The notes: generated from the letters alone by a model not told the origin. DNA of 64,000 bases from IMGVR_UViG_3300042519_004024:62001-126000, one strand, 5' to 3'. Positions 882 to 14,964 are shown, counted from the first letter of the stretch. Numbers and translations: made by a program.

Positions 882-1490
882 TTACTGTTGTAGATGTGTC
901 ATAAGAACACCACCTAACGCAGTTGCATGTACTTGTAAATGGTTAATCGATTCCATATCAAGTCTTGTTTTTCTTTTTGTATAATCTAAACCTAAAGTTC
1001 CAATAAACTTATCATCAATTGTTTTAATTGCAAATAAGTAACCAGACTTACAGTTAGTATCTTCTGCAATATATTTTAAACCATATGTAGCAATTGATTC
1101 ATCCTTGTAATCAGGAATTTCAATAACGTCGTTACTTAGTAATTGATTTATAGATTTTGAAAATAGGTTTACTGGTATGTTATGAAAATTTGTTTGGACT
1201 GATGTGACTCCAGGATGTACCGTTTCATACATTATAGAAAACTTAGCCATTGATTTTCCTGTTGGGTAAAAGTTACCCCCATTGTGGAATTGTGTTATCC
1301 AAACCCTATCAGCATTAAACTCTTCTTTTATGTGTTCTATTTTGTTTGTTACAAGCTCTGAAACCCTTAAAGTTTCTTTAACCATATCAGGTTTTTCCTT
1401 CTTCTCAAGCTTACTCTTTATATAAAGAACTAAGATTGGTCCGATAACTCCCGTTATAAATGCAATAATAATCCCCACGTATTCACTCAT
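882..1490 (-). CDS. Single-TM protein with GAF-like domain; holin/antiholin candidate
   Basis: Hydrophobic aa 5-24, basic KSKLEKKEK, then GAF-like segment (ADRVWITQFHNG...IKTIDDKFIGTLGLDY); next to lysis genes. Confidence 0.6.
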   Translation of the reverse strand: MSEYVGIIIAFITGVIGPILVLYIKSKLEKKEKPDMVKETLRVSELVTNKIEHIKEEFNADRVWITQFHNGGNFYPTGKSMAKFSIMYETVHPGVTSVQTNFHNIPVNLFSKSINQLLSNDVIEIPDYKDESIATYGLKYIAEDTNCKSGYLFAIKTIDDKFIGTLGLDYTKRKTRLDMESINHLQVHATALGGVLMTHLQQ

Positions 1491-1774: not shown

Positions 1775-1800
1775 TAAAAACCCCCACTTTTGGTGGGGGT
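1775..1800 (-). terminator. Intrinsic terminator after small holin
   Basis: ACCCCCAC-CAAAA-GTGGGGGT followed by T-run on minus strand. Confidence 0.8.
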
Positions 1801-1823
1801 TAGTTACTAATTTTAATAAAAAT

Positions 1824-1991
1824 TTATTTCTTGTCAACAATAGACCAAATAGCCCCTGTTAATGTCATAGCACCACCAACTATTTCAGTAACAGTTGTTT
1901 CATCCACTAAACCTTTCATTACTAAGATACCACCAACAAATGTCAATGCATGTCTGATGATTCCCATAATTTGTTCTTTAGTTAATTTCAT
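1824..1991 (-). CDS. Small two-TM putative holin (Pam3-gp28-like), 55 aa
   Basis: Hand translation MKLTKEQIMGIIRHALTFVGGILVMKGLVDETTVTEIVGGAMTLTGAIWSIVDKK; directly after endolysin; IRHALTFVGG motif. Below ORF-track cutoff. Confidence 0.75.
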   Translation of the reverse strand: MKLTKEQIMGIIRHALTFVGGILVMKGLVDETTVTEIVGGAMTLTGAIWSIVDKK

Positions 1992-2026
1992 AATATAAAT
2001 TTTAAAAGTTTATTTTATAATAAATA

Positions 2027-2851
2027 TCACTTAAGTAAGTTATAGTATTCTTTAAAGTGTTTTATTCTATCGGCAAGTCCTATTGTACCACCATTTACTC
2101 GTTTTGTCACCGCAGTAACTGTAGCATCATCAGCCCCCTTATCACAAATGGACCACAATTTATTTGAGTCGAAAAAGAATGCAGCAGAAGCTAATGGGTA
2201 TTTTGTTGCTACCAAGTCAGGATTTGCAATACAATCTTCACCAATGAACTTAGTAAAACTTGTGTAGTTTGCCTTCCCTGTTAATTGGATATAGCCTCTT
2301 CCTCTGAATTTAAAACCTTCTTTAGACAATTCATCACCATTACCCATTCTTCCACCATAAACTCTTGAAGCAATTTTTTCGGGTTGTCTTGCATATGATT
2401 CAGCAAGGGTTCCTGGAAAGTATTTACCAAATATTTTCTTTAGACCGTCCGCAGAATAGTTTAAATTTTCTGAAACCGCTTTAAATCCGCCTGATTCGTG
2501 TCCACATTGTGAAAGGAAATGTGCAAGTCTAAGGTTATTCGTAATATTGAATTTTTTTGCAGTTTCAGGTATTTGTGCAATAACAACATCAGGAATATGT
2601 CCTTTTAATCTTTCAATATTTAATCCTGTCACTGGTGTAATTACAACGTCTTCTTTAACTACTTGGGTTGTTCCAAACATTTTCGACCAAGTGCCGTCAC
2701 CAACAATACCATCGGCAGTTAATCCGTTTGCTGATTGCCATTCTTTAACTTTTTTTTCAGTGTTAGGACCAAATGAACCGTCTGCAGTTAAACCTAATTT
2801 TGTTTGGAGTTTTTTTACATCGTCTCCTTTCGATCCTACTTTTAATAACAT
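2027..2851 (-). CDS. Endolysin: peptidoglycan-binding domain plus glycoside hydrolase family 19
   Basis: LKVGSKGDDVKKLQ...DGIVGDGTW binding domain; HFLSQCGHESGGF, FRGRGYIQLTGKANY, VTKRVNGG GH19 motifs. Confidence 0.92.
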   Translation of the reverse strand: MLLKVGSKGDDVKKLQTKLGLTADGSFGPNTEKKVKEWQSANGLTADGIVGDGTWSKMFGTTQVVKEDVVITPVTGLNIERLKGHIPDVVIAQIPETAKKFNITNNLRLAHFLSQCGHESGGFKAVSENLNYSADGLKKIFGKYFPGTLAESYARQPEKIASRVYGGRMGNGDELSKEGFKFRGRGYIQLTGKANYTSFTKFIGEDCIANPDLVATKYPLASAAFFFDSNKLWSICDKGADDATVTAVTKRVNGGTIGLADRIKHFKEYYNLLK

Positions 2852-2862
2852 AGTTTTTTGTT

Positions 2863-3540
2863 TTATTGTTTATTTTCTGTTGCGTATTTAATACCCATAA
2901 TGGTTCCTACAATTGAGAATGCGTTTGTTAAAAGAATACCAAAAATGTTAGACCAAGCAGCACTAATAACTTGTGTGTCTTTACCCATAACAAGTGTGAA
3001 CACATAAACACCGGTAGTAATAATACCAACACCAACAATAATATAAAGTGCGACTCTTACTATTGTTGATATTAATTCTGTTTGATTTTTCTTTTGTAGT
3101 AAGTCTAAATCATTTTCGGCGTTTTGTTTGGCGGTTTCAGCCACGATCCTTGCTTGTTCGACTTTAACCATTTCATTTTTTAACTCTTCGGTAAGTCTTA
3201 AATTATCTTGTTTCCACTCATTTAATTCTCTATTTTGAACTTCAAAGGTTAATCTCGATTCTTCAACATTACTTAAACTTTGTTGTAGCTCCTGTAGTAT
3301 TCTTTCATTTTCTTGATTTGCAACCACTAAGTCTTCATTTTGTTTTTGTATTTTTTTTGTCATCTCAAGACGTTTCTTTCTTTTATCTTCGTCTTTTGAT
3401 AAACAATTTTTTAAATACTCTTTAAACTCTTCGTCACCCTCATTGTCAATAAGTTTAGTAATATTACCTTCAAGACCTATACCTTTTTTTTGATACAAAT
3501 CTATTAAAGTTTTTTTAGTATTACTATCTATTTTTATCAT
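2863..3540 (-). CDS. Coiled-coil protein with two C-terminal TM helices
   Basis: Heptad-rich aa 50-150, two hydrophobic helices near C-terminus; 4-nt overlap with response regulator. Confidence 0.8.
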   Translation of the reverse strand: MIKIDSNTKKTLIDLYQKKGIGLEGNITKLIDNEGDEEFKEYLKNCLSKDEDKRKKRLEMTKKIQKQNEDLVVANQENERILQELQQSLSNVEESRLTFEVQNRELNEWKQDNLRLTEELKNEMVKVEQARIVAETAKQNAENDLDLLQKKNQTELISTIVRVALYIIVGVGIITTGVYVFTLVMGKDTQVISAAWSNIFGILLTNAFSIVGTIMGIKYATENKQ

Positions 3541-3974
3541 TTGTAAACTTTAAATGGTAATGTTCTGTTTTTATAACCCTCATAGTCTTTTCTGAATTCT
3601 TCTAAACGAGGTTCAATATCATCTGATTTAATAATCCAGAATTGAGCACCAGCCTGGAGCGCTTTTGCTTGTTCTTCAGATTCATTTGATGATGATATAA
3701 TACCAATAACTACATGATTACCATACTCAAAATTAATTTTTCTAATTAATTCTATACCATCAAAAGAACTTCCTATTATATTTAAATCAACAAACACACA
3801 TTCAGGTTTATCATTATCGTCCCCATTTTGGAACCATTTTTGAAATAGTTTTGCCGCTTCATCAGAACTGCTTAACGCATTTAAAGACAAACTTATGTCA
3901 AGTAACGAACAAGCGTCTTCAAATACCAAATGGAATAAATCCTCGTCATCCACTAATAAAATTGAATCAATCAT
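3537..3974 (-). CDS. Single-domain CheY-like response regulator
   Basis: LLVDDED acidic pocket, VFVDLN phospho-Asp, ISSS switch residue, FWIIKS conserved Lys; no output domain. Confidence 0.92.
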   Translation of the reverse strand: MIDSILLVDDEDLFHLVFEDACSLLDISLSLNALSSSDEAAKLFQKWFQNGDDNDKPECVFVDLNIIGSSFDGIELIRKINFEYGNHVVIGIISSSNESEEQAKALQAGAQFWIIKSDDIEPRLEEFRKDYEGYKNRTLPFKVYK

Positions 3975-3992
3975 TTTTTCTTTTTTTGTTTT

Positions 3993-6116
3993 TTATTTTA
4001 TTTTTATTTTCATTTTTGTTCCTATCTCATTTTTCTCACAAGTAATATTAAACTTGTGTTCCTCTAAAATTGCAACGCAAATATTTAACCCCAAACCTGT
4101 GCCTGATTCTGTTTGTCCTTCTTTTCTTATGTATGGTTTACGTAGGTGATCAAAATCTTGTTGTGTAATCCCTCTACCATTATCTTGAATGTATATATTA
4201 TTCTCATCAGAATAAATTTTAACGAACTTAGTGTCTGAATCATTATATTTTAAACCATTCCTAATAAGGTTATCTACCGCAGTACAGAATAACGCTTCGT
4301 TTACTTCTATTGTTGGTAAGTCCTCAATAATAACCTGACTACTATAAGCCGTAGATGATAGGTAATCAGATAGAATTGATTTTAAATTACATTCCGTTTT
4401 ATTTAAAACCACGTCTTTTTTAACTAAGTTGGTGAACTCATAAACGCCTTTATAAACTTTTTGTGAATGTTTAAGTCCTTCCTTAATCATTCTAATTGGT
4501 GCTTCTATTTTTAATGATGTAATATCTTCAGAACTTAATCTTCTTTCTAAAGAACTTAATCCTCTTGGCATGTAAGTATTTATACCTGAATGCATATCGT
4601 GTCTTAATATCTTTGCTGCGTGTTCTAAGTAAGTGTTTTTCTTTTCAATTTCTTTTCTTTGTTCATATGAATTGGTCACATCTGTTGCGATTTTCATAAC
4701 ACGATAAATTTTACCGTCTAAACCAACAATTGGGTTGTATGTTGCTTGTAGATGAACTAAAGTACCGTCTTTTTTAACTCTAGTGATTTCACCCGTAAAT
4801 AATACTCCTTCATTTAATTTTTTCCAAAAAAGTAAATATTCTTTACTTTTTGCATGATCCTCGTCTATAAAAATTCTGTGGTGTTTTCCAATTATTTCAT
4901 CCGGTGAAGAATAACCCATAGTATTTAAAAACAATTCATTAGCAAAAATAATGTTCCCTTGTAAATCAAACTCAATAACCGCATTAGATTTATTTATCGC
5001 ATTCATTCTATTACGGATCTCAACTTCTTTTCTTTTAAGTTCTGTGACATCTTGTCTAATTGATGAAAACCCTTCTAATTTACCATACTTATCAAAATTC
5101 GCTTTGATGTATGTATCAACATAGTATAACTCTCCTGACTTTCCTTTATTGGTTACAACGTCATTCCATATCTCACCTTTCATTACGGTTTCATACATCT
5201 TACCCCAATATCCATCAGGTTGTAATCCAGAGTTAACAACAATATGGTCCTTACCTTTAACCTCCTCTAAAGACCATCCTGAAACTTCTTCAAACTTATG
5301 GTTTACATAAGTTATTTTACCTTTGTTATCAGTAACTGAAACAATTGACGACTCGTTTAAAAACTTTTCAGTTTCTTTATTTCTTCTATTTAAATCGTTT
5401 CCTTCTTTAACAGAATAGGCAAACGTATATAAAGATGAAAGAAGTTGTGCAAAATCAACCTCAACTTTATCCCATTCACGAAGAGTTAAACTTTCAATAC
5501 ATATGACACCAATAGTTTCTCCTTTATATGTTATTGGAACATCCAACATTGATTTTACACCGAGTGGTTTTAAATACCCCTCAGTAAAACAAGAAGTCGC
5601 ACTATGTGTTTCAGCATCATTAGCAATAATGATTGGGTTAATTAATAGGGATAGGAAATATGGTTGGAAGTCTTTTTTATGTAGTTCAATGTTTTGGTAC
5701 CAAGTATCTTCTGATTTAATATATAATTGCTCACATATGATTGAACTTTTATCTTTATTATATAACCATATTGAACATCTATCAGCATTAATAGATTCTA
5801 TCACTTCTTTGGTTAAAACCTTAGCGCCTTCCGAAGTATTACCCTCATAAAATAAAGGATTGTGTGATTGAGATATAAGAGTTTCATTTAGTTTTTTAAC
5901 ATACTTACTCTGTTCTTTACCTTTTTTATTTCTTTTTATGTATTCAATAACAACGAAAGCAAAGAATGGTAAAAACGCCAAAAAACAAGTATAACCAAAA
6001 TACCCAATTTCGTCTATGTAATTTATAAAATGAAACACAAGTAGTGATTGGGTGGTAAAGAATGTTCCCATAATTATTACGGAAATAATCAAAGAAATTT
6101 TAGATAATTTTGTCAT
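3993..6116 (-). CDS. Sensor histidine kinase (2TM-GAF-PAS-PAS-HisKA-HATPase)
   Basis: Two N-terminal TMs; GAF; two PAS/PAC domains; H-box ILRHDMHSG; N-box DNLIRNGLKYN; G1 DNGRGI; G2 GTGLGL. Confidence 0.93.
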   Translation of the reverse strand: MTKLSKISLIISVIIMGTFFTTQSLLVFHFINYIDEIGYFGYTCFLAFLPFFAFVVIEYIKRNKKGKEQSKYVKKLNETLISQSHNPLFYEGNTSEGAKVLTKEVIESINADRCSIWLYNKDKSSIICEQLYIKSEDTWYQNIELHKKDFQPYFLSLLINPIIIANDAETHSATSCFTEGYLKPLGVKSMLDVPITYKGETIGVICIESLTLREWDKVEVDFAQLLSSLYTFAYSVKEGNDLNRRNKETEKFLNESSIVSVTDNKGKITYVNHKFEEVSGWSLEEVKGKDHIVVNSGLQPDGYWGKMYETVMKGEIWNDVVTNKGKSGELYYVDTYIKANFDKYGKLEGFSSIRQDVTELKRKEVEIRNRMNAINKSNAVIEFDLQGNIIFANELFLNTMGYSSPDEIIGKHHRIFIDEDHAKSKEYLLFWKKLNEGVLFTGEITRVKKDGTLVHLQATYNPIVGLDGKIYRVMKIATDVTNSYEQRKEIEKKNTYLEHAAKILRHDMHSGINTYMPRGLSSLERRLSSEDITSLKIEAPIRMIKEGLKHSQKVYKGVYEFTNLVKKDVVLNKTECNLKSILSDYLSSTAYSSQVIIEDLPTIEVNEALFCTAVDNLIRNGLKYNDSDTKFVKIYSDENNIYIQDNGRGITQQDFDHLRKPYIRKEGQTESGTGLGLNICVAILEEHKFNITCEKNEIGTKMKIKIK

Positions 6117-6120
6117 ATTA

Positions 6121-6175
6121 ATAAATATAACAAAATCTTAAAAACTATTTACTTTTCAAACTAAGACATATTTAT
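6121..6175. promoter_or_regulatory. Divergent pair of TATTTAT putative late promoters
   Basis: Minus copy 6121-6127 before the kinase and plus copy 6169-6175 before the YkuD-like gene; motif precedes more than 20 genes in sense orientation. Confidence 0.7.
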
Positions 6176-6191
6176 AAATAAAATTAATATT

Positions 6192-6800
6192 ATGAGTTAC
6201 ACAAGAGAACAAATTGAGACAGCCGTAAAGGCTAAAGGGTACAAATGGTTTGAGGATTCTTCAAACAAAAGTTATGACGTAAACATAGTTGGGGTTAGGA
6301 ATACTTCTCCAGCCGTTTATAGAAAGGTTACAAATGTTTTTGATGATCACTTAACCATTTCTTTTAAAGATGAAAAAGGTAGTTGGCAGTTCTACTGTTG
6401 GATGGGTACTTGTGATCCAGGTAAAAAAGGTGTACAACAATTCCATAACAGTAAAGGTGTTGCAAGACTTGTTCCGGGACAATACAGAGGTGTATGGAAA
6501 GTGGATAAACATCAAGGTAAGTATGATGCTCTTTGTCAAAGAAATGGTAACGTTACTGTATGGAGAGATGCTAACAAAGATTTAGTCTTTGAAGAAAAAG
6601 TAACTGATACAGGAATGTTTGGTATTAACATTCACAAAGCAGGTCAGGATTCACAATGGGTTGAAAATTGGTCTGAGGGTTGTCAGGTATTCAAAAGAGT
6701 TAAGGACTTTGATGAATTTATGTCAATATGTAAAAAAGCCGCAAAAATTCACGGAAACAAATTTTCTTACACTCTTTTAGAGTCGACAGATATTAAATAA
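6192..6800 (+). CDS. L,D-transpeptidase (YkuD)-like protein
   Basis: GINIHKAG-x8-WSEGCQVF resembles the His...S-x-G-C catalytic motif. Confidence 0.6.
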   Translation: MSYTREQIETAVKAKGYKWFEDSSNKSYDVNIVGVRNTSPAVYRKVTNVFDDHLTISFKDEKGSWQFYCWMGTCDPGKKGVQQFHNSKGVARLVPGQYRGVWKVDKHQGKYDALCQRNGNVTVWRDANKDLVFEEKVTDTGMFGINIHKAGQDSQWVENWSEGCQVFKRVKDFDEFMSICKKAAKIHGNKFSYTLLESTDIK

Positions 6801-7738: not shown

Positions 7739-7760
7739 ATCTTTTCCGTTTTGATTTATA

Positions 7761-7790
7761 CAAAGATATGAAAATTTTATTAATTACAAA
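7761..7790 (-). promoter_or_regulatory. Bacteroidota-type housekeeping promoter
   Basis: TTTG-N18-TATCTTTG on minus strand. Confidence 0.7.
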
Positions 7791-7803: not shown

Positions 7804-8310
7804 TTATTTATTTTTTAATTCAAGTAAATATTGATAAAGTTCGTCTTCTTGTCCCGGTGAGTATCCAACATATGATTTAACAATATTACCATATACATCT
7901 AAAATGAAAGTGTGTGGTATATTATTTACCCCTAAAGCTCTTTTTAAATCACCATTTACATCCAACCAAACTTCATAATCCCAAGAACTTCCTTTAACGT
8001 ATGTCTCTACAGAATTTTTAGTTTTCTCATCATCTACTGAAACAGCAATTAGTGTTACACCGGTACTATCAACCCACTGAGAGTAAACATCATTAATTGA
8101 ATTTAATTCTTTTTTACACGGAGCACACCAAGTAGCCCAAAAACTAATAACAACCGGCCCTTCATACTTTAATTTAGCAGTATTTACCCCTTCCCCATCT
8201 AAAGTTTTTATATAAACTGTTGGTAGTTTTCTTAATGTGGTATCAATTTGTGTTGATTGCCCAAAAAATAAGAATGGAATTAAAAATAGTGTTATCAAAA
8301 AAGACTTCAT
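7804..8310 (-). CDS. TlpA/ResA-family thioredoxin-like disulfide reductase
   Basis: Signal peptide; SFWATWCAPCKKEL; NNIPHTFILD. Confidence 0.9.
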   Translation of the reverse strand: MKSFLITLFLIPFLFFGQSTQIDTTLRKLPTVYIKTLDGEGVNTAKLKYEGPVVISFWATWCAPCKKELNSINDVYSQWVDSTGVTLIAVSVDDEKTKNSVETYVKGSSWDYEVWLDVNGDLKRALGVNNIPHTFILDVYGNIVKSYVGYSPGQEDELYQYLLELKNK

Positions 8311-8388
8311 AATTTTGTTTTTTTATTATAATAAATACTCTTGAGGTTACAGAGTTAATTAAATATTGAGCACCTCTATCTCATTTTG

Positions 8389-8461
8389 TTGTCAGTAAAG
8401 GATTCGAACCAATGACACGTCCCTAAAAAGGGATTGCTCTAACCAACTGAGCTAACTGACA
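8389..8461 (-). ncRNA. Aberrant tRNA-Lys-like RNA (6-nt anticodon loop)
   Basis: Perfect acceptor TGTCAGT/ACTGACA, canonical D arm, loop TTTTTA, two T-T mismatches in T stem. Confidence 0.7.
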
Positions 8462-8499
8462 TACCTAATAATAAAACTTTAGTTTTACATTGTCAAGTG

Positions 8500-8573
8500 T
8501 GGTCCTTGTTGGGATCGAACCAACCACCCACAGATTATGAGTCTGTTGCTCTAACCGAATGAGCTAAAGGACC
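8500..8573 (-). tRNA. tRNA-Ile2(CAT), lysidine type (elongator Met less likely)
   Basis: ACAGA-CTCATAA-TCTGT; C4:G69 and C5:G68 match TilS determinants. Confidence 0.85.
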
Positions 8574-8579
8574 TATTTG

Positions 8580-8662
8580 ATGTCAGGGAGGGATTCGAAC
8601 CCACAATGAGCAACCATCTTTAACAGATGGATTCAGTACCACACTTCTTTACACTCCTGACA
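8580..8662 (-). ncRNA. tRNA-like RNA with disrupted D arm
   Basis: Acceptor TGTCAGG/CCTGACA; T arm GTGGG-TTCGAAT-CCCTC; central hairpin CCATC-TGTTAAA-GATGG. Confidence 0.65.
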
Positions 8663-8664
8663 AA

Positions 8665-8769
8665 CAACGACTCTTCAGCATTCTACTCCCCGCAAATACA
8701 TAAATGTAACACGAAATTGTATCTAATTTAACCCTACGTTGGCGGTACGGGTACTGAAGTTCATCGTTG
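8665..8769 (-). ncRNA. Structured ncRNA candidate between tRNA-Leu and a tRNA-like element
   Basis: Nested helices CAACGAT/GTCGTTG, CTTCAGTA/TGCTGAAG, CCCGTA/TGCGGG. Confidence 0.65.
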
Positions 8770-8854
8770 GTACTCGAAGAGGGACTCGAACCCTCACAAC
8801 CCACTGGTCAACAGAGCTTAAACCTGTCGTGTCTACCAATTCCACCATCCGAGC
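8768..8854 (-). tRNA. tRNA-Leu(TAA)
   Basis: Class II cloverleaf, ACAGG-TTTAAGC-TCTGT, encoded CCA. Confidence 0.93.
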
Positions 8855-8944
8855 ATTTTAAAGAGTTATTTTCTCTTTCTTACCATAAAGATAAACAAAA
8901 CAAATAATACAAATAATATTGGTGTCATAATTTTTTAATTTTTG

Positions 8945-9029
8945 TAGTCAGGACAGGAATCGAACCTGTACTAAACCTGGTATACACCATATTAAATTAG
9001 GAACGTGTTACCAATTACACCACCTGACT
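8945..9029 (-). ncRNA. tRNA-like RNA lacking a canonical anticodon arm
   Basis: Acceptor AGTCAGG/CCTGACT, D arm GTGT-AATTGGTA-ACAC, T arm ACAGG-TTCGATT-CCTGT; centre has TGGT-GTAT-ACCA hairpin. Confidence 0.75.
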
Positions 9030-9041
9030 ATTTTTATTGTG

Positions 9042-9113
9042 CGGTCCATCCGGGAATCGAACCCGAAGCATATCCGTGACAGGGATATATGTTAGCCGTT
9101 ACACCAATGGACC
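9042..9113 (-). tRNA. tRNA-Asp(GTC)
   Basis: TATCC-CTGTCAC-GGATA, G73. Confidence 0.95.
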
Positions 9114-9175
9114 AAAAAACCACATTACAAAACCATAAAGGTACAACTCCTGCGGTTGCGTTGTTCATCATATTG

Positions 9176-9247
9176 TAGTCCGTACGGGAATCGAACCCGT
9201 GACTCTGCCGTGAAAGGGCAGCGACTTAACCCCTTGTCGAACGGACC
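9176..9247 (-). tRNA. tRNA-Glu(TTC)
   Basis: CTGCC-CTTTCAC-GGCAG. Confidence 0.95.
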
Positions 9248-9263
9248 ATCTTATTTGGTATTA

Positions 9264-9295
9264 CAAAGATATGTAAACTGTTTCAATCTACCAAA
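9264..9295 (-). promoter_or_regulatory. Bacteroidota-type promoter for tRNA-Glu onward
   Basis: TTTG-N20-TATCTTTG. Confidence 0.8.
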
Positions 9296-9301
9296 TTTTT
9301 T

Positions 9302-9457
9302 TTACTTTTTTTTGTGGGACCCGCTCCCCACTCTAAACTTGTACTTCGTTCTATTAAGCGTTTTTTTCAGTTTTTTTAACCAATCAGTATTCGTGTTAGT
9401 TTTAACAAATTTAAATCTTCCTGATTCGCAAGTTCCTGATAAAACTTCTCTCATCAT
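9302..9457 (-). CDS. Putative 51-aa basic protein in tRNA array
   Basis: Hand translation MMREVLSGTCESGRFKFVKTNTNTDWLKKLKKTLNRTKYKFRVGSGSHKKK; fills a gap between tRNAs. Confidence 0.45.
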   Translation of the reverse strand: MMREVLSGTCESGRFKFVKTNTNTDWLKKLKKTLNRTKYKFRVGSGSHKKK

Positions 9458-9479
9458 TCATTTGTATTAATTGTTTATT

Positions 9480-9552
9480 TGGTGGACACTGTGGGAATCG
9501 AACCCATACGATCTGATTGCAAATCAGTCGACCTGCCGTCGGCATCAGGCCC
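9480..9552 (-). tRNA. tRNA-Ala(TGC), slightly atypical
   Basis: Loop TTTGCAA centred on TGC; G3:U70 and A73; encoded CCA; irregular acceptor/T junction. Confidence 0.8.
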
Positions 9553-9557
9553 ATTTG

Positions 9558-9629
9558 TGCGGGTAGAATGAATCGAACACTCATCTCCACATTGGAAGTG
9601 TGGAGTAATAACCATTATACGATACCCGC
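9558..9629 (-). tRNA. tRNA-Gly(TCC)
   Basis: CCACA-CTTCCAA-TGTGG. Confidence 0.93.
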
Positions 9630-9633
9630 AAAT

Positions 9634-9849
9634 TGTGACTACTCCGTTGGGATTTGTTTCGTCACTTTATCGTGAATGGGGTGATCAAACCCACTAACAT
9701 CACGGGTGTAAGTTTGTATGTCAAACTATCTCCACAAAACATTAGTTTTTATCTCTAAAACTAAAAAAACGACTTGACACCTTGTAACCCCCCTTTTAAG
9801 TGCGTGTTACCATCCTTTCTCAAGTAGAATATACTGCTTACACTCCCGT
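9634..9849 (-). ncRNA. Two-domain structured ncRNA candidate
   Basis: ACGGG(A)GTGTAAG/CTTACACCCGT closes 9702-9849; inner GTAAC/GTTAC and TAGTTTT/AAAACTA; second domain closed by GTGAT/GTCAC. Confidence 0.6.
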
Positions 9850-9929
9850 ACTGACGGTGGGATTCGAACCCACGTTTTAAACTTACCGCTACAGGCATAG
9901 ATGATATAAGCATCCACTGGTACATCAGC
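9849..9929 (-). ncRNA. tRNA-like RNA with rearranged D/anticodon region
   Basis: Acceptor GCTGATG/CGTCAGT; perfect T arm GTGGG-TTCGAAT-CCCAC; no normal D arm. Confidence 0.65.
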
Positions 9930-9935
9930 ATTTAG

Positions 9936-10007
9936 TTGCGGGGGCAGGATTCGAACCTGCGACCTACGGGTTATGAGCCCGCCGAGCTACCACTGCTCTA
10001 CCCCGCG
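9936..10007 (-). tRNA. tRNA-fMet(CAT)
   Basis: C1xA72 mismatch, GGG/CCC anticodon stem, loop CTCATAA. Confidence 0.95.
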
Positions 10008-10014
10008 ATATTTG

Positions 10015-10089
10015 TGGTGAGGGAATGGAATCGAACCATCGGCACAAGAGTTTTCTGTCTCCTTGCTCTACCTACTGAGCTACCGCACC
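10015..10089 (-). ncRNA. Aberrant tRNA-Phe-like RNA (8-nt anticodon loop)
   Basis: Phe-like body; stem AGGAG/CTCTT with loop ACAGAAAA; extra base and mismatch in acceptor stem. Confidence 0.7.
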
Positions 10090-10090
10090 A

Positions 10091-10275
10091 TAATTTGTGA
10101 TTTAGTAGTTGACTCACACTCTCGTTTCACCATCTTGAGCCAACAGGTTAATGTACTTTACGAGTTTCCCGTTTCTTACAACCACAATATTTTAAAATCA
10201 CTTTCGCCCCCTGTATAGACATACGTCAGATGCTTAAGGTCAGCCTTAACTATTAAGGGAGCCACCCGTGATTTT
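10091..10275 (-). ncRNA. Two structured RNA domains in the leader of tRNA array A
   Basis: AATCAC/GTGATT closing with TTAAGG-CTGA-CCTTAA; TTGTGGTT/AATCACAA closing with GTTGGCTCA/TGAGTCAAC. Confidence 0.55.
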
Positions 10276-10360
10276 TATTTTTAATATTTCAATGAACTTC
10301 TTCTTTCTTCACGGGAGTAGGACACCAACCTCTAACTTCCTACCCCCGTTCTCTGTCTTA

Positions 10361-10392
10361 CAAAGATATGTAATCTATTTTAATTTGCCAAA
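10361..10392 (-). promoter_or_regulatory. Bacteroidota-type promoter of tRNA array A
   Basis: TTTG-N20-TATCTTTG, followed by a 12-bp hairpin at about 10311-10349. Confidence 0.8.
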
Positions 10393-10400
10393 TCTTTTTT

Positions 10401-10748
10401 TTATTTTTTTATAAAGTACTCTTCAACTACGAATTTTCTTCCTTCTTTTTTTAGTACTCCAACAAAATCATCTTCGTGATGAATACCACAATAAAAACCT
10501 GAACCATCATGCCACAAACCACGTTTATTGTTTTTGTAAACGTTTTCACCATCAAACGTGATGTAATCAGGTTGGAATTCCTTTGTAAGGTTTGCCGCTC
10601 TAATCATTTCACGATTTTCAGAAGGGGTATAACTCCCACCAAAATCACTTTTGCAAAGAAACGTCGCCTTTCCAACCACAACTTTCTCTCCGTTGAGTGT
10701 TGCGTTTTTATCAAATTTTTTCTTGTAAGTGTAGATATAAACTCCCAT
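10401..10748 (-). CDS. Hypothetical early protein
   Basis: ATG 10748 preferred because promoter TTTG-N19-TATCTTTG (10765-10795) lies inside the longer ORF. Confidence 0.75.
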   Translation of the reverse strand: MGVYIYTYKKKFDKNATLNGEKVVVGKATFLCKSDFGGSYTPSENREMIRAANLTKEFQPDYITFDGENVYKNNKRGLWHDGSGFYCGIHHEDDFVGVLKKEGRKFVVEEYFIKK

Positions 10749-10833
10749 ATGTTTTTTATTTCTACAAAGATATGTAATCACTTTTGATTTGCAAAATCTT
10801 TTTTAAACTTTTTTTACCAATATGTCAAAGAAC

Positions 10834-10863
10834 AAAAAAACCCACCTCTTTTGGAGATGGGTT
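10834..10863 (-). terminator. Intrinsic terminator / possible attenuator 3:4 hairpin
   Basis: ACCCATCTC-CAAAA-GAGGTGGGT plus T-run. Confidence 0.8.
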
Positions 10864-10888
10864 TCAAAATTTATTATGTATTAAATTA

Positions 10889-10963
10889 TCATACCATCTC
10901 CTTATAGGAACGATCCTCAGCTATCACCAATCCGCCTAATAATATGATATGTAAATTTTTCAT
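10889..10963 (-). CDS. Putative 24-aa leader peptide
   Basis: Hand translation MKNLHIILLGGLVIAEDRSYKEMV; late motif at 10986-10992; 3' end complementary to terminator 5' arm. Confidence 0.55.
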   Translation of the reverse strand: MKNLHIILLGGLVIAEDRSYKEMV

Positions 10964-11022
10964 TTGCGTTTTTATTTGTTTTGTTATAAATATATGATAC
11001 TTTTTAAAAGTGTCAAGTTTTT

Positions 11023-11346
11023 TTAATATTTTCTTCTTGAGTATTTAAAATTTCCGTGTCTCTTTTTGTATGCGTCATAAAATGTTCTACCATACTTTTC
11101 GTCACCAAATAATCTTTTTTTAATGTCTTCAGGTATGTCTTCAAAATTTTCTACTTCACTATATGGATCATAATCAAATTCGTAATAACCAGTATCTTCT
11201 AAGTCCTTATCAAAATATGTGTGCTCACCTTCATCATCAACCCAATGATCAGTATCGCCAAACTTTGCTCTATACTTAGATTCTTTAATGACTTTATTAA
11301 CAATTCTAACTAAATCTGATTCTGTTAGTCTTATAATTTTTTTCAT
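11023..11346 (-). CDS. LTESDL-leader family protein
   Basis: MKKIIRLTESDLVRIVNKVIKES. Confidence 0.85.
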   Translation of the reverse strand: MKKIIRLTESDLVRIVNKVIKESKYRAKFGDTDHWVDDEGEHTYFDKDLEDTGYYEFDYDPYSEVENFEDIPEDIKKRLFGDEKYGRTFYDAYKKRHGNFKYSRRKY

Positions 11347-11355
11347 AATAATCTA

Positions 11356-11868
11356 TTAATATCCATGTTTTTTTGGGTACATTATATGTTCTAAATGAGA
11401 AGTATATTCAAAAGTTAAAACATCAAGTACGTCATTAATTCCATTTTTCATTTTTGAATCCTCTTCAAGTGAGTTATATTCATTTTCATAATAACTTATT
11501 AATTCTTCAAAAAGTTTTCCAATCATATTAATATTTGTTTTCCACAACGTCTTCCATTCTTCTTTTTCGTATTGTGAAAGTTCGTCATATTCAATTTCAT
11601 CATTAAATCTTTTTGATGGTCTTCTAGTGAATTTAGACATGTTTCTTTTTCTCCATAAATCATAATCGTGTTGAATGTCTCCATAACGTAAATAATTTCC
11701 TGGGATATTTTTTTCTATAAGGTAATTATTAAACAAATCTATTAACTCCGTTTTAAATTTTTCAATTTCTTCAGGTGTGATTACTTTATAAATTTCAGAT
11801 ATATTATTTTCTTTAATTACTCGTCTAACAATTCTCGCTAGATCGGATTCTGTAAGTCTATTTCTCAT
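11356..11868 (-). CDS. LTESDL-leader family protein
   Basis: MRNRLTESDLARIVRRVIKEN. Confidence 0.85.
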   Translation of the reverse strand: MRNRLTESDLARIVRRVIKENNISEIYKVITPEEIEKFKTELIDLFNNYLIEKNIPGNYLRYGDIQHDYDLWRKRNMSKFTRRPSKRFNDEIEYDELSQYEKEEWKTLWKTNINMIGKLFEELISYYENEYNSLEEDSKMKNGINDVLDVLTFEYTSHLEHIMYPKKHGY

Positions 11869-11882
11869 TTTTATATTTTTTA

Positions 11883-12497
11883 TTATGCATATTCTTCATC
11901 GTCAAAGTCCTCATACTCATCAAATGGGTCCTCACGCCTTTTTGTTATTATCGTCCCTTCACCATCTATTTTACCACCAGTCCCGAATACGTCTTTTGGT
12001 AATTTTCTATACTTTTCAGGTTTATAATCTTCAGGATATCTTTTTTTTTGTATAAAGTCATCCCAACCTTCACCTAATTCTTCATCTCTTCCTTTTGTTT
12101 TTGCAAATGCTTTTTTCAAATCATTAACTGAGTGTCCTCCAATCGCATCGTATGGTTCGTCCTCATCAACTTTATAGAAACCTTCTTTTTCCATTAAGTA
12201 TTCAATATCGTTAGGCAAATCACCATAACCTTCATCACGTAAAGCCATAACAATATCAAATTCACTCATCAAATTAAGGTCGTGTATATCATATTCACAT
12301 TCATTTTCAAGTATATCTCTTGCCTGTTCAATTAAATCTTGAAGTCTTTCCTCACCTCTATCGGTTTGTCCCCACTCTTCATCATCACTATAGTATGGAT
12401 CATACATACTTCTATCTTTATAGTCGTCGTTTTCTTTAATTACCCGTCTAACAATTCTTGCTAAATCTGATTCTGTTAGTCTTATTATTCTTTTCAT
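11883..12497 (-). CDS. LTESDL-leader family protein, acidic
   Basis: MKRIIRLTESDLARIVRRVIKEN. Confidence 0.85.
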   Translation of the reverse strand: MKRIIRLTESDLARIVRRVIKENDDYKDRSMYDPYYSDDEEWGQTDRGEERLQDLIEQARDILENECEYDIHDLNLMSEFDIVMALRDEGYGDLPNDIEYLMEKEGFYKVDEDEPYDAIGGHSVNDLKKAFAKTKGRDEELGEGWDDFIQKKRYPEDYKPEKYRKLPKDVFGTGGKIDGEGTIITKRREDPFDEYEDFDDEEYA

Positions 12498-12499
12498 TA

Positions 12500-13033
12500 T
12501 TATCTGTTGTTTCTACTTTTATCGGACTTTCCGTAATGGTGTCCTGATTGGTATTTATCATAACCTTTTCTTTTAAACCAAGCGGCGTCTCTAAGAGTAT
12601 TACTCGCTAAAGCATAAACGCCTAAAGCAGCAGCAATTCCCCCACTTATAAACATCGCTGCCGGAACAATTGCTAATGCCGCACCAACTGAACTATAGCC
12701 AATAATTTTATCAATAATACTTCTTATTTCATATTCATTATCACCCATTTCATTTTCATCCTCTTCCGTCAATACAGACTCCAAAGAATCTTTAACTATT
12801 GATTGTAAAGATTCAATACCGTTACTTTCTATAAAATCACGTAACATATCTTGCTCTTCAGGACTCAATTGTTCTGTAGCCTCTTTACTACTTTGTTCCA
12901 ATTCCATTTTTGAAAAATCGACATCCGATTCCATATCTTCAGATTGTGAAATCCATTCTTCTTCGTTTTCTTTAATCACTCGTCTAACAATTCTTGCTAG
13001 ATCAGATTCTGTAAGTCTTATAATTTTTTTCAT
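12500..13033 (-). CDS. LTESDL-leader family protein with hydrophobic hairpin
   Basis: MKKIIRLTESDLARIVRRVIKEN; hydrophobic SSVGAALAIVPAAMFISGGIAAALGVYALA. Confidence 0.85.
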   Translation of the reverse strand: MKKIIRLTESDLARIVRRVIKENEEEWISQSEDMESDVDFSKMELEQSSKEATEQLSPEEQDMLRDFIESNGIESLQSIVKDSLESVLTEEDENEMGDNEYEIRSIIDKIIGYSSVGAALAIVPAAMFISGGIAAALGVYALASNTLRDAAWFKRKGYDKYQSGHHYGKSDKSRNNR

Positions 13034-13063
13034 TATTTTTTTATTTATAAATACTTTGTTATT

Positions 13064-14020: not shown

Positions 14021-14054
14021 ATAGTATAAATATTAAAATACTATAAAATGTACA

Positions 14055-14372
14055 CTATATTAATTTAATAAGGTCCGTTGGGTAAACTTTTTTTAGTTGG
14101 ATGTCGTATGTTTTTATAAACCAATCTAAAAGTAGGCTATCGGTTTCATAATCAAAAAATGACTTTAATTCATTATATAATTTTAAAGGACAATTTAAAT
14201 CGTCTCCGTAACCAATATGATTAAAATAAAAAAACACAAATTGTTTTTTGTTTTTTGTGTCAACTAAATAAAAGGCAATGAAATCTCCATCACATTTGTG
14301 AAGTAGTTTGAGTTTATTTAACTCAGGTAAAAACATATTAATATAATCTGAAAAAGACTTCTCTAAACTCAT
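14055..14372 (-). CDS. Hypothetical protein
   Basis: ATG 14372 overlaps upstream TGA (ATGA). Confidence 0.65.
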   Translation of the reverse strand: MSLEKSFSDYINMFLPELNKLKLLHKCDGDFIAFYLVDTKNKKQFVFFYFNHIGYGDDLNCPLKLYNELKSFFDYETDSLLLDWFIKTYDIQLKKVYPTDLIKLI

Positions 14373-14674
14373 AACTCTTGTACTTGAATCATAATCCAAT
14401 CAACTTCACCTTCAGTTAGGTTACCAAGTACGTCTTCAGTTATATGAGTATTGTATGTAATTTCCCATTCATTTTCATTTCCATGCAGCACGGCAACTTC
14501 CCATTCATTTTCATCTGAAGTATATGACGCATACCTAAACCCTTTTTCAGATATAGGACTTGGTATTTTAAACCTTACAACAGATAATCCATATCCATTA
14601 GGAAAAAATATTAATCCGTGTTGCCCATCAAATGTTGGGTGTGGTTTAAATACAATATCCTTAAATGATTTCAT
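14369..14674 (-). CDS. Hypothetical phage protein
   Basis: ORF track; TAATG coupling to upstream small ORF. Confidence 0.75.
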   Translation of the reverse strand: MKSFKDIVFKPHPTFDGQHGLIFFPNGYGLSVVRFKIPSPISEKGFRYASYTSDENEWEVAVLHGNENEWEITYNTHITEDVLGNLTEGEVDWIMIQVQEL

Positions 14675-14826: not shown

Positions 14827-14841
14827 CTCATTTATTTTTTA

Positions 14842-14872: not shown

Positions 14873-14879
14873 TTTTTTG

Positions 14880-14953: not shown

Positions 14954-14964
14954 ATTTATTTATG

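What the first reader, a model, noticed from the sequence alone, without database searches (positions are those of the whole stretch)
1824..6127. Phage two-component sensor operon coupled to the lysis cassette
SEEN: one putative late promoter (6121-6127) precedes kinase, CheY-like regulator (18-nt gap), coiled-coil/2TM protein (4-nt overlap), GH19 endolysin (11-nt gap), holin and terminator. Catalytic residues look intact (H-box His, N/G1/G2 boxes; receiver DD, D, S, K). The regulator has no DNA-binding domain. KNOWN: stand-alone receivers act by protein contact; PAS-A resembles NifL/Aer flavin redox PAS and PAS-B resembles BdlA-type PAS; T4 delays lysis through antiholin-holin binding. INFERENCE: a phosphorelay that sets lysis timing from host redox or oxygen state, with the coiled-coil membrane protein as holin/antiholin-type output. 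I know of no characterised phage lysis control of this kind. Best candidate for a new system.
Basis: partly seen in the sequence, partly recalled or inferred. Interest (0 to 1): 0.92.

Follow-up and report, generated by a model that had tools for sequence, protein, structure and literature searches.

The report
Phage sensor relay wired to lysis genes
A large group of uncultured freshwater phages carries its own sensor kinase, a small relay protein and a new kind of membrane protein, nearly always placed among the genes that burst the host cell, which suggests (but does not prove) that these viruses time or gate lysis according to signals they sense.

Summary
On the minus strand, 6116 to 1824, lie a sensor histidine kinase (2 TM-GAF-PAS-PAS-DHp-CA), a receiver-only regulator, a coiled-coil protein ending in a TM hairpin ("CC"), a GH19 endolysin and a holin, followed by a strong terminator.

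Comparison with about 150 related viral contigs shows:
- The conserved unit is kinase(s) -> receiver -> CC. Order is invariant, and the receiver and CC genes overlap or abut.
- Kinase sensor domains are shuffled, and some phages add a second kinase with a periplasmic sensor.
- A cell-wall hydrolase lies within 2.5 kb in 36 of 45 fully flanked variants. It belongs to four unrelated families and sits in at least eight arrangements.
- Relatives exist in which PAS or GAF sensors are fused directly to the CC coiled coil and TM hairpin. These lack kinase and receiver and sit inside lysis cassettes.
- A Bacteroidota genome has the same kinase-receiver pair followed by the CC N-domain fused to a second kinase.

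The TM hairpin is therefore the output of the pathway. A role in lysis is inferred from context only. CC has no detectable homology to holins, and the module is optional: close relatives lack it at this site. The reading is partly supported, novel and untested.

The parts
6117..6191 (.). Divergent intergenic region (75 nt) between the kinase gene (minus strand) and the p3000 gene (plus strand). It holds the upstream motif ATATTTATT at 6120-6128 on the minus strand, 4 nt before the kinase ATG.
   Evidence: Sequence. Motif enrichment in the window. In relatives the motif (up to 1 mismatch) lies within 45 nt upstream of the first kinase gene in 56%, of holin10 in 100% and of p3000 in 67%, against 16% for other genes and 0% for RR, CC, HK2 and c18.
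3993..6116 (-). Sensor histidine kinase, 707 aa. It has two N-terminal TM segments (about aa 7-28 and 37-61), GAF (aa 99-229), PAS-A (about aa 250-370, FAD-PAS type), PAS-B (about aa 371-490), DHp with H box LRHDMHSGIN (His506, codon 4599-4601), and HATPase_c (aa 610-706).
   Evidence: Pfam, NCBIfam NifL PAS match, PDB matches 3ewk, 8dik and 2gj3, hydropathy, conservation of the boxes in 70 distinct relatives, dN/dS 0.15.
3537..3974 (-). Stand-alone receiver (CheY-like response regulator), 145 aa, with no output domain. The phospho-acceptor is Asp63 (codon 3786-3788). It is the most conserved gene of the module.
   Evidence: Pfam Response_reg above cutoff. D9 D10 D63 S94-96 K116 fall in columns at 97% or more across 65 distinct sequences. 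dN/dS 0.07. 66% identical to the receiver of a bacterial cassette.
2863..3540 (-). CC effector, 225 aa, a new family. It has a small conserved N-terminal domain (aa 1 to about 70; 3331-3540), one long helix (aa 37-185) that runs into TM1 (about aa 160-186; 2983-3063), a short loop, and TM2 (about aa 197-219; 2884-2952). TM2 is highly conserved and has a small/polar face: G201, T205, N206, S209, G212, T213, G216.
   Evidence: No Pfam or NCBIfam match. AF2 model, pLDDT 85. Invariant columns. Hydropathy. No PDB fold match. Family restricted to 263 representatives at 50% identity. At least 7,959 clusters at 90% identity in metagenomes. The N-domain is also found fused to HisKA-HATPase_c, and the hairpin fused to PAS or GAF.
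2027..2851 (-). Endolysin: PG_binding_1 + GH19 catalytic domain, 274 aa, starting 11 nt after CC.
   Evidence: Pfam. PHROG endolysin phrog_181, E = 3e-67. DNA similarity to lysins of Flavobacterium and Cellulophaga phages.
2019..2027 (-). Second copy of the ATATTTATT motif, in the 35-nt gap before the holin gene (it overlaps the lysin stop codon).
   Evidence: All 12 holin10 genes in relatives have the motif (up to 1 mismatch) within 45 nt upstream.
1824..1991 (-). Holin, 55 aa, Phage_holin_10 (Pam3 gp28) family.
   Evidence: Pfam 67.7 bits, cutoff 27. Family alignment.
1779..1801 (-). Intrinsic-terminator-like hairpin (9 pairs, 6 G-C) followed by a T run. It ends the transcription unit.
6192..6800 (+). 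p3000, 202 aa, a probable second cell-wall-acting enzyme transcribed divergently from the kinase. It belongs to the lysis neighbourhood, not to the signalling module.
   Evidence: phrog_3000 (7e-35) and endolysin phrog_33083 (2e-10). The same domain is fused to PG_binding_1 in L039, L074 and L075. Invariant His and Cys columns. No PDB fold match, so the enzymatic type is unresolved. In 18 relatives it lies about 105 nt from the GH19 lysin with no module between.

Best explanation
This is a phage-encoded signalling pathway whose output is a membrane protein acting in or on the lysis machinery.

Shown by sequence and comparison:
- One or two sensor kinases are present. In this window there is one, membrane-anchored, with GAF, a FAD-type PAS and a second PAS. 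In some relatives there is a second kinase with a periplasmic sensor.
- The kinases are encoded with one highly conserved receiver-only regulator.
- The regulator gene is coupled to a new protein, CC, built of a small N-terminal domain, a long cytoplasmic helix and a C-terminal TM hairpin.

Inferred:
- The kinase phosphorylates Asp63 of the receiver.
- The phosphorylated receiver binds the CC N-domain.
- The signal travels along the helix and changes the packing or oligomeric state of the TM hairpin in the inner membrane.
- This either holds back or triggers the canonical holin, or opens a leak that depolarises the membrane and fires the holin. Release of the GH19 endolysin is thereby advanced or delayed according to host redox or energy state and, where the second kinase is present, to periplasmic cues.

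The module is an optional timing accessory and is not needed for lysis as such.
For: 1. Conserved unit. The order HK[-c18-HK2]-RR-CC is invariant in 66 representative loci, and the RR and CC genes overlap or abut in all.
2. Function retained. Catalytic residues are invariant or nearly so, and dN/dS is 0.07-0.21.
3. The receiver-to-N-domain link is conserved with another output. In a Bacteroidota MAG contig with cellular neighbours (CreD, a T9SS cargo protein, DUF5690), a PAS kinase (55% identical) and a receiver (66% identical) are followed, with gene overlap, by the CC N-domain + coiled coil + HisKA + HATPase_c.
4. The hairpin is the output. GAF, FAD-type PAS, PAS-B and 2x PAS are each found fused directly to the coiled coil and TM hairpin. 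Three of the four lie on contigs seen in more than one sample or assembly; P0156 is on a single 1.6-kb contig. No kinase or receiver lies within the roughly 5-6 kb of available flank around the GAF and 2x PAS forms.
5. Lysis context of the three-gene form. A peptidoglycan hydrolase lies within 300 nt in 27 of 45 fully flanked variants and within 2.5 kb in 9 more. It is GH19, GH24, Peptidase_M15_3 or p3000, upstream or downstream and on either strand.
6. Lysis context of the fused forms. PAS-CC-TM lies between a 2-TM c7 protein and an M15 endolysin, with overlapping stops and starts. GAF-CC-TM heads a run of c7, a TM + coiled-coil protein, a lipoprotein, a GH19-like gene and a glucosaminidase. 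The 2x PAS form lies between a TM + coiled-coil protein and a lipoprotein, 0.8 kb before a GH19 lysin.
7. Shared upstream motif. The same motif precedes the first kinase gene, the holin and the hydrolases, but none of the internal genes.
8. Hairpin features. TM2 has an invariant small/polar face, as expected for helix packing or a pore.
9. Input. PAS-A is closest to the FAD-binding PAS domains of MmoS, Aer and NifL.
Against: - There is no homology between CC and any holin or antiholin. hhalign against the phage's own holin family gives probability 0.3%. Pfam holin matches are sub-threshold and no better than unrelated families. There is no PDB fold match.
- Seven of 45 fully flanked variants, including a lineage seen on 10 contigs, have no recognisable hydrolase within the flank. 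Their neighbours are tRNAs, DnaK, a metallophosphoesterase and a class II tRNA-synthetase-like gene.
- The region is a variable accessory region, and the variants are related, so the linkage counts are not independent events.
- A canonical holin is present as well, so CC is not required to explain lysis.
- Close relatives lack the module at this site.
- The direction of the effect (delay or trigger), the signal, phosphotransfer and receiver-CC binding are all untested.
- The holin-like and spanin-like labels of neighbouring small genes rest on TM, lipobox and size features only.
Confidence: 0.55

Rival explanations
1. The pathway is real, but its membrane output serves something other than lysis. 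Candidates are a regulated ion leak or a membrane-protein inhibitor used for host takeover (energy state, motility, secretion), or superinfection exclusion. Under this reading its position near lysis genes reflects a shared variable accessory region and shared late expression.
For: CC has no homology to holins. The module occurs without nearby hydrolases in several lineages, next to DnaK, a phosphoesterase, a class II tRNA-synthetase-like gene and tRNAs. The module is optional next to the lysin. A second kinase with a periplasmic sensor and a secreted partner, c18, would suit sensing of outside events.
Against: Linkage persists across four unrelated hydrolase families and at least eight arrangements. 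The fused one-component forms are embedded inside lysis cassettes with overlapping reading frames.
Confidence: 0.25
2. CC is not the effector. It is a membrane scaffold or a further relay that places the receiver or kinase at the membrane. The real targets of the receiver are host proteins, for example host kinases or regulators, by cross-talk.
For: In the bacterial cassette the N-domain protein is itself a kinase, that is a relay and not an end point. The window kinase is membrane-anchored. The receiver is far more conserved than CC: dN/dS 0.07 against 0.21.
Against: The most conserved part of CC is TM2, with invariant polar residues, which is not expected of a mere anchor. Sensors fused directly to the coiled coil and hairpin, without kinase or receiver, leave the hairpin as the only possible output in those phages.
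Confidence: 0.12
3. The kinase-receiver pair is a passively carried host-derived gene cassette with no role in the phage cycle.
For: A cellular counterpart exists in Bacteroidota. The module is optional among close relatives.
Against: Strong purifying selection. Catalytic residues are invariant or nearly so across 65-70 distinct variants. At least 7,959 clusters of CC at 90% identity are present in public data. The phage-specific replacement of the kinase output by a TM hairpin, and active shuffling of sensor domains, also argue against passive carriage.
Confidence: 0.03

Closest known systems
LytSR - LrgAB / Cid system of Staphylococcus and Bacillus (own knowledge)
   Same: A two-component system coupled to holin- and antiholin-like membrane proteins that control murein hydrolase action. 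Its input is related to membrane energy state.
   Different: It is bacterial, not phage-encoded. LytR carries a LytTR DNA-binding domain and acts on transcription, and LytS has a multi-TM sensor. Here the receiver has no output domain, the presumed control is protein to protein, and CC is unrelated to LrgA or CidA (no Pfam match).
T4 lysis inhibition (antiholins RI and RIII acting on holin T) and dual-start or pinholin control (lambda S107/S105, phage 21 S68/S71) (own knowledge)
   Same: Signal-dependent or built-in control of holin triggering by a second membrane or cytoplasmic protein encoded in or near the lysis cassette. Pinholin control relies on a two-TM hairpin with small-residue packing motifs.
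   Different: These systems have no kinase, no receiver and no PAS or GAF sensor. Antiholins are either holin isoforms or bind holin domains directly. CC shows no homology to the resident holin and carries a cytoplasmic helix of about 150 residues and an N-domain.
Single-domain receiver pathways: CheY-FliM, and DivK-DivL-CckA of Caulobacter (own knowledge)
   Same: A receiver-only regulator acts by binding a partner protein. The bacterial relative of this module (kinase -> receiver -> N-domain-kinase) has the same logic as DivK controlling a kinase through DivL.
   Different: The partner domain here (the CC N-domain) is a new family with no Pfam match. The phage output is a TM hairpin, which is neither a motor switch nor a kinase.
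Phage-encoded sensing that sets life-cycle decisions: VP882 VqmA-Phi quorum receptor, arbitrium AimR (review PMC7790227, listed, title and abstract only; own knowledge)
   Same: The phage carries its own sensor and uses it to decide when to kill the host.
   Different: Those are one-component transcription factors that govern the lysogeny-lysis switch. Here a His-Asp phosphorelay (or a direct sensor fusion) is linked to a membrane protein at the lysis step itself.
FAD-binding PAS sensors MmoS, Aer and NifL
   Same: PAS-A aligns over its full length with 3ewk (E = 1.5e-25), 8dik and 2gj3, and with the NifL NCBIfam model.
   Different: Cofactor binding was not tested. The domain is absent from many relatives' kinases.

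Membership tests
Two-component system: class I histidine kinase | HATPase_c catalytic domain with N, G1 and G2 boxes | tested here: met
   Pfam HATPase_c 52.6 bits, cutoff 26.4. LIRNGLKYN, DNGRG and GLGL are conserved in 70 distinct relatives.
Two-component system: class I histidine kinase | DHp domain with a phospho-accepting His (H box) | tested here: inconclusive
   Pfam HisKA is not detected in the window protein. An invariant H-box-like LRHDMHSGINTY lies at the expected distance before the CA domain. Which His is phosphorylated was not tested.
Two-component system: response regulator receiver | Receiver fold with acidic pocket DD, phospho-Asp, S/T and K | tested here: met
   Pfam Response_reg 36.9 bits, cutoff 30.2. 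D9 D10 D63 S94-96 K116 fall in columns at 97% or more across 65 sequences.
Two-component system | Phosphotransfer from kinase to receiver | not testable with these tools
   Needs a biochemical assay.
Holin (any family) | Sequence membership of a described holin family | tested here: not met
   For CC there is no Pfam match above cutoff. Phage_holin_9 scores 14 bits against a cutoff of 27, and only 7 of 47 members match it, at E = 0.15 or worse. hhalign against the Phage_holin_10 family gives probability 0.3%.
Holin (functional class) | Small membrane protein with one or more TM segments, encoded beside the endolysin | tested here: inconclusive
   CC has two C-terminal TM segments and lies directly upstream of an endolysin in many loci. 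However, it is 225 aa, with a cytoplasmic part of about 155 aa, and a canonical holin is also present.
Holin / antiholin (functional class) | Forms, or blocks, a lethal membrane lesion; binds the holin | not testable with these tools
   Needs expression and membrane-potential or lysis assays.
Spanin (i-spanin) | N-terminal TM anchor with a periplasmic coiled coil | tested here: not met
   CC has no N-terminal TM or signal sequence. Its TM segments are C-terminal, so the coiled coil is cytoplasmic.
LytSR-type lysis regulators | LytTR DNA-binding output on the regulator; LytS-type multi-TM sensor | tested here: not met
   The receiver has no further domain, and the kinase has GAF and PAS sensors.
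FAD-binding PAS (MmoS/Aer/NifL type), for PAS-A | Full-length sequence similarity to solved FAD-PAS domains | tested here: met
   3ewk E = 1.5e-25, 8dik 5.5e-17, 2gj3 1.9e-9. NifL model TIGR02938, positions 17-133.
FAD-binding PAS (MmoS/Aer/NifL type), for PAS-A | Bound flavin cofactor | not testable with these tools
   Needs purified protein.
GH19 endolysin | Glyco_hydro_19 catalytic domain, with a cell-wall binding domain | tested here: met
   Pfam 36.2 bits (cutoff 25.5) and PG_binding_1 51 bits. phrog_181 endolysin, 3e-67.
Phage_holin_10 (Pam3 gp28) holin, for ORF 1824-1991 | Pfam family membership | tested here: met
   67.7 bits, cutoff 27.

The most novel reading that the evidence does not exclude
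These phages run a lysis clock that is gated by signal transduction. A His-Asp phosphorelay (or, in sister phages, a PAS or GAF sensor fused directly) controls a new class of TM-hairpin effector. The effector triggers or restrains the holin, so the moment of host lysis depends on host redox or energy state and on periplasmic cues. This would be the first phosphorelay-controlled lysis step in any virus, and a new non-transcriptional output class for two-component systems.
Probability: 0.45. Interest if true: 0.92.

Novelty: new variant of a known kind. Interest (0 to 1): 0.8.

Why it matters
- Lysis timing is the main life-history trait of a lytic phage. The known controls are built-in holin clocks or the T4 superinfection signal. 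A phage-encoded sensory pathway feeding into the lysis step would show that viruses can adjust burst time to the host's physiological state.
- The pathway also defines a new output for two-component signalling: a receiver-binding N-domain, a signalling helix and a TM hairpin. It has natural one-component versions and a cellular kinase-output version, which together form a ready set of comparisons for experiments.
- The family is abundant in environmental data: at least 7,959 clusters at 90% identity. It is absent from 50,697 deposited phage genomes.
- None of my five full-text searches returned a paper describing it. Of the papers returned, only PMC7824862 was opened.

Tried and rejected
- CC as a homologue of the resident holin. 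An eye alignment of TM1 looked suggestive, but hhalign gives probability 0.3%. Rejected.
- CC hairpin against Pfam at a lax threshold. Phage_holin_9 was the top match for the isolated hairpin (E = 0.037). Across 47 members it matched only 7, at E = 0.15 or worse, and was outnumbered by unrelated families. Treated as noise.
- Foldseek of the CC model against PDB: nothing below E = 4.
- p3000 as a YkuD-like enzyme, suggested by an H...SxGC-like motif. The AF2 model (pLDDT 76) has no PDB match below E = 0.2. The enzyme type stays open. Its cell-wall link rests on PG_binding_1 fusions and a PHROG endolysin match.
- Spanin reading of CC: rejected by topology.
- T4-like late promoter. The 7-mer ATAAATA at 6121-6127 reads that way only on the plus strand and is common. 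The real recurrent element is the minus-strand 9-mer. Six genes in the window that lie next to the motif were scanned against PHROGs. Five had no match and one matched only a family of unknown function, so its temporal class cannot be assigned.
- Search for the module in deposited phage genomes. There is no CC or receiver homologue, and the kinase gives only PAS-level matches.
- PHROG annotation of the small genes in the fused-form cassettes gave no functional annotation: only weak matches to families of unknown function (best E = 4.6e-5).
- The lysin-centred scan did not include the contigs whose module lacks a nearby lysin. The distance between module and lysin in those genomes is therefore still unknown.

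Full report
**1. What is in the window**

The window is part of IMG/VR contig UViG_3300042519_004024, which is 214 kb long. GC content is about 30%. There are 24 tRNA genes, and 78 of 98 called genes are on the minus strand.

Three observations point to a large phage of Bacteroidota:
- The lysin DNA resembles lysins of Flavobacterium and Cellulophaga phages and of two uncultured phage records of 460-630 kb.
- Many genes are preceded by TAnnTTTGTA, which from my own knowledge is the Bacteroidota -7 promoter type: 21 copies against 11 expected.
- The closest cellular relative of the module lies in a Bacteroidetes MAG.

From 6116 down to 1824 on the minus strand lie five genes:

| Gene | Coordinates | Length |
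|---|---|---|
| Histidine kinase (HK) | 3993-6116 | 707 aa |
| Receiver-only regulator (RR) | 3537-3974 | 145 aa |
| Coiled-coil / TM protein (CC) | 2863-3540 | 225 aa |
| PG_binding_1 + GH19 endolysin | 2027-2851 | 274 aa |
| Phage_holin_10 holin | 1824-1991 | 55 aa |

- Spacings are 18 nt, a 4-nt overlap, 11 nt and 35 nt.
- A strong terminator-like hairpin follows at 1801-1779.
- The kinase has two N-terminal TM segments, GAF, two PAS domains, an H-box region and HATPase_c.

**2. The conserved unit is kinase(s) -> receiver -> CC**

Scans of viral contigs with the kinase and with CC returned 156 loci. These hold 77 distinct RR+CC protein pairs, of which 66 were mapped gene by gene.
- The order HK-RR-CC is invariant, and the RR and CC genes overlap or abut in all 66.
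- The receiver is the most conserved gene: 77-97% identity, dN/dS 0.07.
- HK has dN/dS 0.15 and CC 0.21.
- The H, N, G1 and G2 boxes and the receiver residues DD, D, S and K are invariant or nearly so across 70 and 65 distinct sequences.

The sensor part of the kinase is shuffled between phages. Observed architectures are:
- TM-GAF-PAS-PAS (this window)
- soluble GAF-PAS-PAS
- TM-GAF-PAS
- TM-PAS-PAS
- soluble PAS-PAS
- TM-PAS

In many lineages a second kinase lies between the first kinase and the receiver. It has a signal peptide, an unassigned extracytoplasmic domain, a TM segment and DHp-CA. In ten of those representative loci it is preceded by a roughly 200-aa secreted protein, c18. Several inputs thus converge on one receiver.

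**3. CC is a new protein, and its TM hairpin is the output of the pathway**

- CC has no Pfam, NCBIfam or PDB sequence match.
- The AF2 model (pLDDT 85) shows a small N-terminal domain, one helix from residue 37 to 185 that continues into TM1, and a return helix, TM2.
- It has no fold match in PDB.
- Conservation is concentrated in the N-domain (E24 G25 N26 F39 Y42 D50 R54 R57 T61 Q65 N68) and in TM2 (W196 through Y219, with invariant N198, T205, N206, S209, T213 and G201/G212/G216). The coiled coil between them varies in sequence and length.
- An exhaustive profile search found only 263 representatives at 50% identity. At 90% identity the family saturates the search at 7,959 or more clusters. 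The family is therefore narrow but abundant.

Among those representatives are informative domain fusions.

*Sensor fused directly to the coiled coil and hairpin:*
- GAF (P0137)
- FAD-type PAS (P0156)
- PAS-B (P0171)
- two PAS (P0169)

*Support for these fusions as real genes:*
- P0137, P0169 and P0171 are on contigs seen in more than one sample or assembly.
- P0156 is on a single 1.6-kb contig.
- The P0137 and P0169 loci share no kinase-core or receiver sequence with the window in the roughly 5-6 kb of available flank.

*CC N-domain and coiled coil fused to HisKA + HATPase_c:*
- These are proteins of 320-350 aa: P0244, P0255, P0259, P0263 and P0267.

*Context of P0259:*
- It sits in a Bacteroidetes MAG contig with clearly cellular neighbours: CreD, a T9SS-sorted protein and DUF5690.
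- It lies directly after a PAS kinase 55% identical to the window kinase core and a 143-aa receiver 66% identical to the window receiver, again with overlapping genes.

*What the fusions imply:*
- The receiver-to-N-domain pairing is kept whether the output is a kinase (bacterium) or a TM hairpin (phage).
- The whole kinase + receiver + N-domain chain can be replaced by a sensor placed at the head of the same helix.
- The simplest reading is that the N-domain receives the signal from the receiver, the helix transmits it and the hairpin executes it.
- Phosphotransfer and binding are inferred, not shown.

**4. Link to lysis**

In the window the module lies between two cell-wall genes. p3000 is divergent, 75 nt upstream, and the GH19 lysin starts 11 nt downstream.

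p3000 matches an endolysin PHROG and is fused to PG_binding_1 in other phages. Its fold has no PDB match.

Among 45 variants with the kinase present and at least 2.5 kb of flank on both sides, the distance to the nearest peptidoglycan hydrolase is:

| Distance to nearest hydrolase | Variants |
|---|---|
| 300 nt or less | 27 |
| 2.5 kb or less | 9 |
| Farther than 2.5 kb | 2 |
| None in the flank | 7 |

Two partly flanked loci, L138 and L146, were wrongly scored as 'none' because the ORF calls overlap.

The hydrolase belongs to one of four unrelated families:
- GH19
- GH24, Phage_lysozyme (1e-43)
- Peptidase_M15_3
- p3000

It is found downstream on the same strand, upstream and divergent, upstream on the same strand, convergent, or 1.3 kb downstream behind small genes.

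The fused one-component forms are the most telling:
- **PAS-CC-TM (P0171).** It lies between a 2-TM protein of family c7 and an M15 endolysin, with 4-nt overlaps on both sides. Elsewhere c7 lies beside M15, GH24 or GH19 lysins.
- **GAF-CC-TM.** It heads a run of c7, a protein with an N-terminal TM and a coiled coil, a lipoprotein, a small ORF, a GH19-like gene and a glucosaminidase.
- **2x PAS form.** It lies between a TM + coiled-coil protein and a lipoprotein, 0.8 kb before a GH19 lysin.

The holin-like and spanin-like labels for these small genes are my inference from TM count, lipobox and position. PHROGs gave no functional annotation for them.

**5. Limits of the lysis reading**

- CC is not homologous to the resident holin or to any Pfam holin family.
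- Seven fully flanked variants, one of them seen on ten contigs, have no recognisable hydrolase nearby. Their neighbours are tRNAs, DnaK, a metallophosphoesterase and a class II tRNA-synthetase-like gene.
- The module is optional. Of the 80 viral loci with the most similar GH19 lysin (82-93% identity), only about a quarter carry the module within 3 kb. In 18 loci p3000 and the lysin face each other across 104-109 nt with nothing between. This looks like the empty site of the window arrangement.
- The variants are related, so the counts are not independent events. The argument rests on the diversity of arrangements and hydrolase families, not on the numbers.

**6. Inputs**

- PAS-A aligns over its whole length with the FAD-binding PAS domains of MmoS (3ewk, 1.5e-25), Aer (8dik) and NifL (2gj3), and with the NifL model. 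That these PAS domains bind FAD is my own knowledge.
- PAS-B matches the same set more weakly, and also LOV domains. From the sequence it lacks the LOV cysteine context (GKHHRIF where LOV domains have a Cys-containing motif; that motif is my own knowledge). The BdlA comparison was not tested.
- Because sensors differ between phages and a periplasmic kinase is often added, redox is one plausible input among several.

**7. Transcription signals**

Most copies lie a few to about 30 nt before start codons.
- There are three copies in this locus: before the kinase (6120-6128), before the holin (2019-2027), and after the terminator, before ORF 1500-1748 (1756-1764).

In relatives, the motif (up to one mismatch) lies within 45 nt upstream as follows:

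| Gene | Share with the motif |
|---|---|
| First kinase gene | 56% |
| holin10 | 100% |
| p3000 | 67% |
| c7 | 43% |
| GH19 lysin | 31% |
| Other genes | 16% |
| RR, CC, HK2, c18, c13 | 0% |

- This fits a start signal at the head of the module, co-transcription of the internal genes, and a shared expression class with the lysis genes. It also means the holin has its own signal.
- Whether the motif is a promoter, and whether it is late, could not be tested. Six genes lying next to the motif were scanned against PHROGs; five had no match and one matched only a family of unknown function.

**8. Comparison with known systems, and novelty**

- The parts that define a two-component system are present (see the membership table).
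- The closest concepts are LytSR-Lrg/Cid in Firmicutes (a two-component system controlling holin-like proteins by transcription), T4 lysis inhibition and pinholin hairpin control, and single-domain receiver pathways such as DivK-DivL-CckA. None shares the effector family or the phage setting.
- No CC or receiver homologue exists in 50,697 deposited phage records. The kinase finds only PAS-level matches there.
- Five full-text searches returned no paper whose title or abstract described a phage histidine kinase or receiver linked to lysis. Only the jumbo-phage survey PMC7824862 was opened; it mentions only a divergent receiver domain that is never found with kinases.
- I rate this a new variant of a known kind: two-component signalling with a new membrane output, carried by a virus and placed in its lysis region.

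**9. Verdict**

| Claim | My confidence |
|---|---|
| The pathway architecture (sensor -> receiver -> N-domain -> helix -> TM hairpin) | about 0.85 |
| The hairpin acts on lysis | about 0.55 |

- The second estimate rests on context only.
- Direction of the effect, the signal and the mechanism at the membrane remain open.
- Interest score: 0.8.

Noticed in passing
window 8388-20201: There are 24 tRNA genes on the minus strand in two clusters. ARAGORN reports two of them (8388-8461 and 8944-9029) with an odd two-base 'tt' anticodon and no amino-acid assignment.
   Followed up: no
window, e.g. 7759-7768, 10359-10368, 10763-10772, 22859-22868, 46484-46493, 49566-49575: TAnnTTTGTA, which resembles the Bacteroidota -7 promoter element (own knowledge), occurs 21 times against 11 expected, mostly just upstream of minus-strand genes. 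It is a different upstream signal from ATATTTATT, so the phage may have two expression classes.
   Followed up: partly
window 6192-6800 (+); L039:6595-7389; L074:10437-11243: The p3000 family has invariant His107, His148 and Cys164. It occurs alone or fused to PG_binding_1 and has no PDB fold match. It is possibly a new cell-wall-acting enzyme family.
   Followed up: partly
L175, L176, L179, L184 and 14 more lysin-centred loci: This is an 'empty site' arrangement. p3000 and the GH19 lysin are divergent and only 104-109 nt apart, with no kinase-receiver-CC module between them. The module therefore behaves as an insertion or deletion cassette at the head of the lysin gene.
   Followed up: partly
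L097:5545-7559, L067:8215-8832, L050:9587-11511, L012:2423-3814: Many relatives carry a second kinase with a signal peptide and an unassigned extracytoplasmic domain. In ten representative loci it is preceded by a roughly 200-aa secreted protein (c18) that has no family match.
   Followed up: partly
L164:5669-9050 (Bacteroidetes MAG RH-18aug17-329): A cellular three-gene cassette: PAS kinase, receiver, and N-domain-kinase. It is the likely source or sister of the phage module, and its final target is unknown.
   Followed up: partly
window 882-1490 (-): A 202-aa protein with one N-terminal TM segment (family c20). It lies downstream of the holin, adjacent or one gene away, in 10 representative loci. 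No function is known. It could be a further lysis-cassette component.
   Followed up: no
window 7804-8310 (-): A 168-aa protein with an N-terminal hydrophobic leader and a WCAPC thioredoxin-type motif. It looks like a secreted thiol-disulfide oxidoreductase, judged from the translation only.
   Followed up: no
L039:5869-6087, L123:8736-8978, L158:6955-7191, L167:2288-2500: Family c7, 70-124 aa with two TM segments in the members examined, lies beside GH19, GH24 or M15 lysins in different phages. It is probably an undescribed holin family of these phages, with no significant Pfam or PHROG match.
   Followed up: partly
window 49603-52026 and 60038-61639 (-): These ORFs match an SbcC-like nuclease subunit (phrog_77, 8e-40) and a virion structural protein (phrog_26672, 2e-10). 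Most other large ORFs tested in the window have no PHROG match, so the phage is remote from described ones.
   Followed up: no
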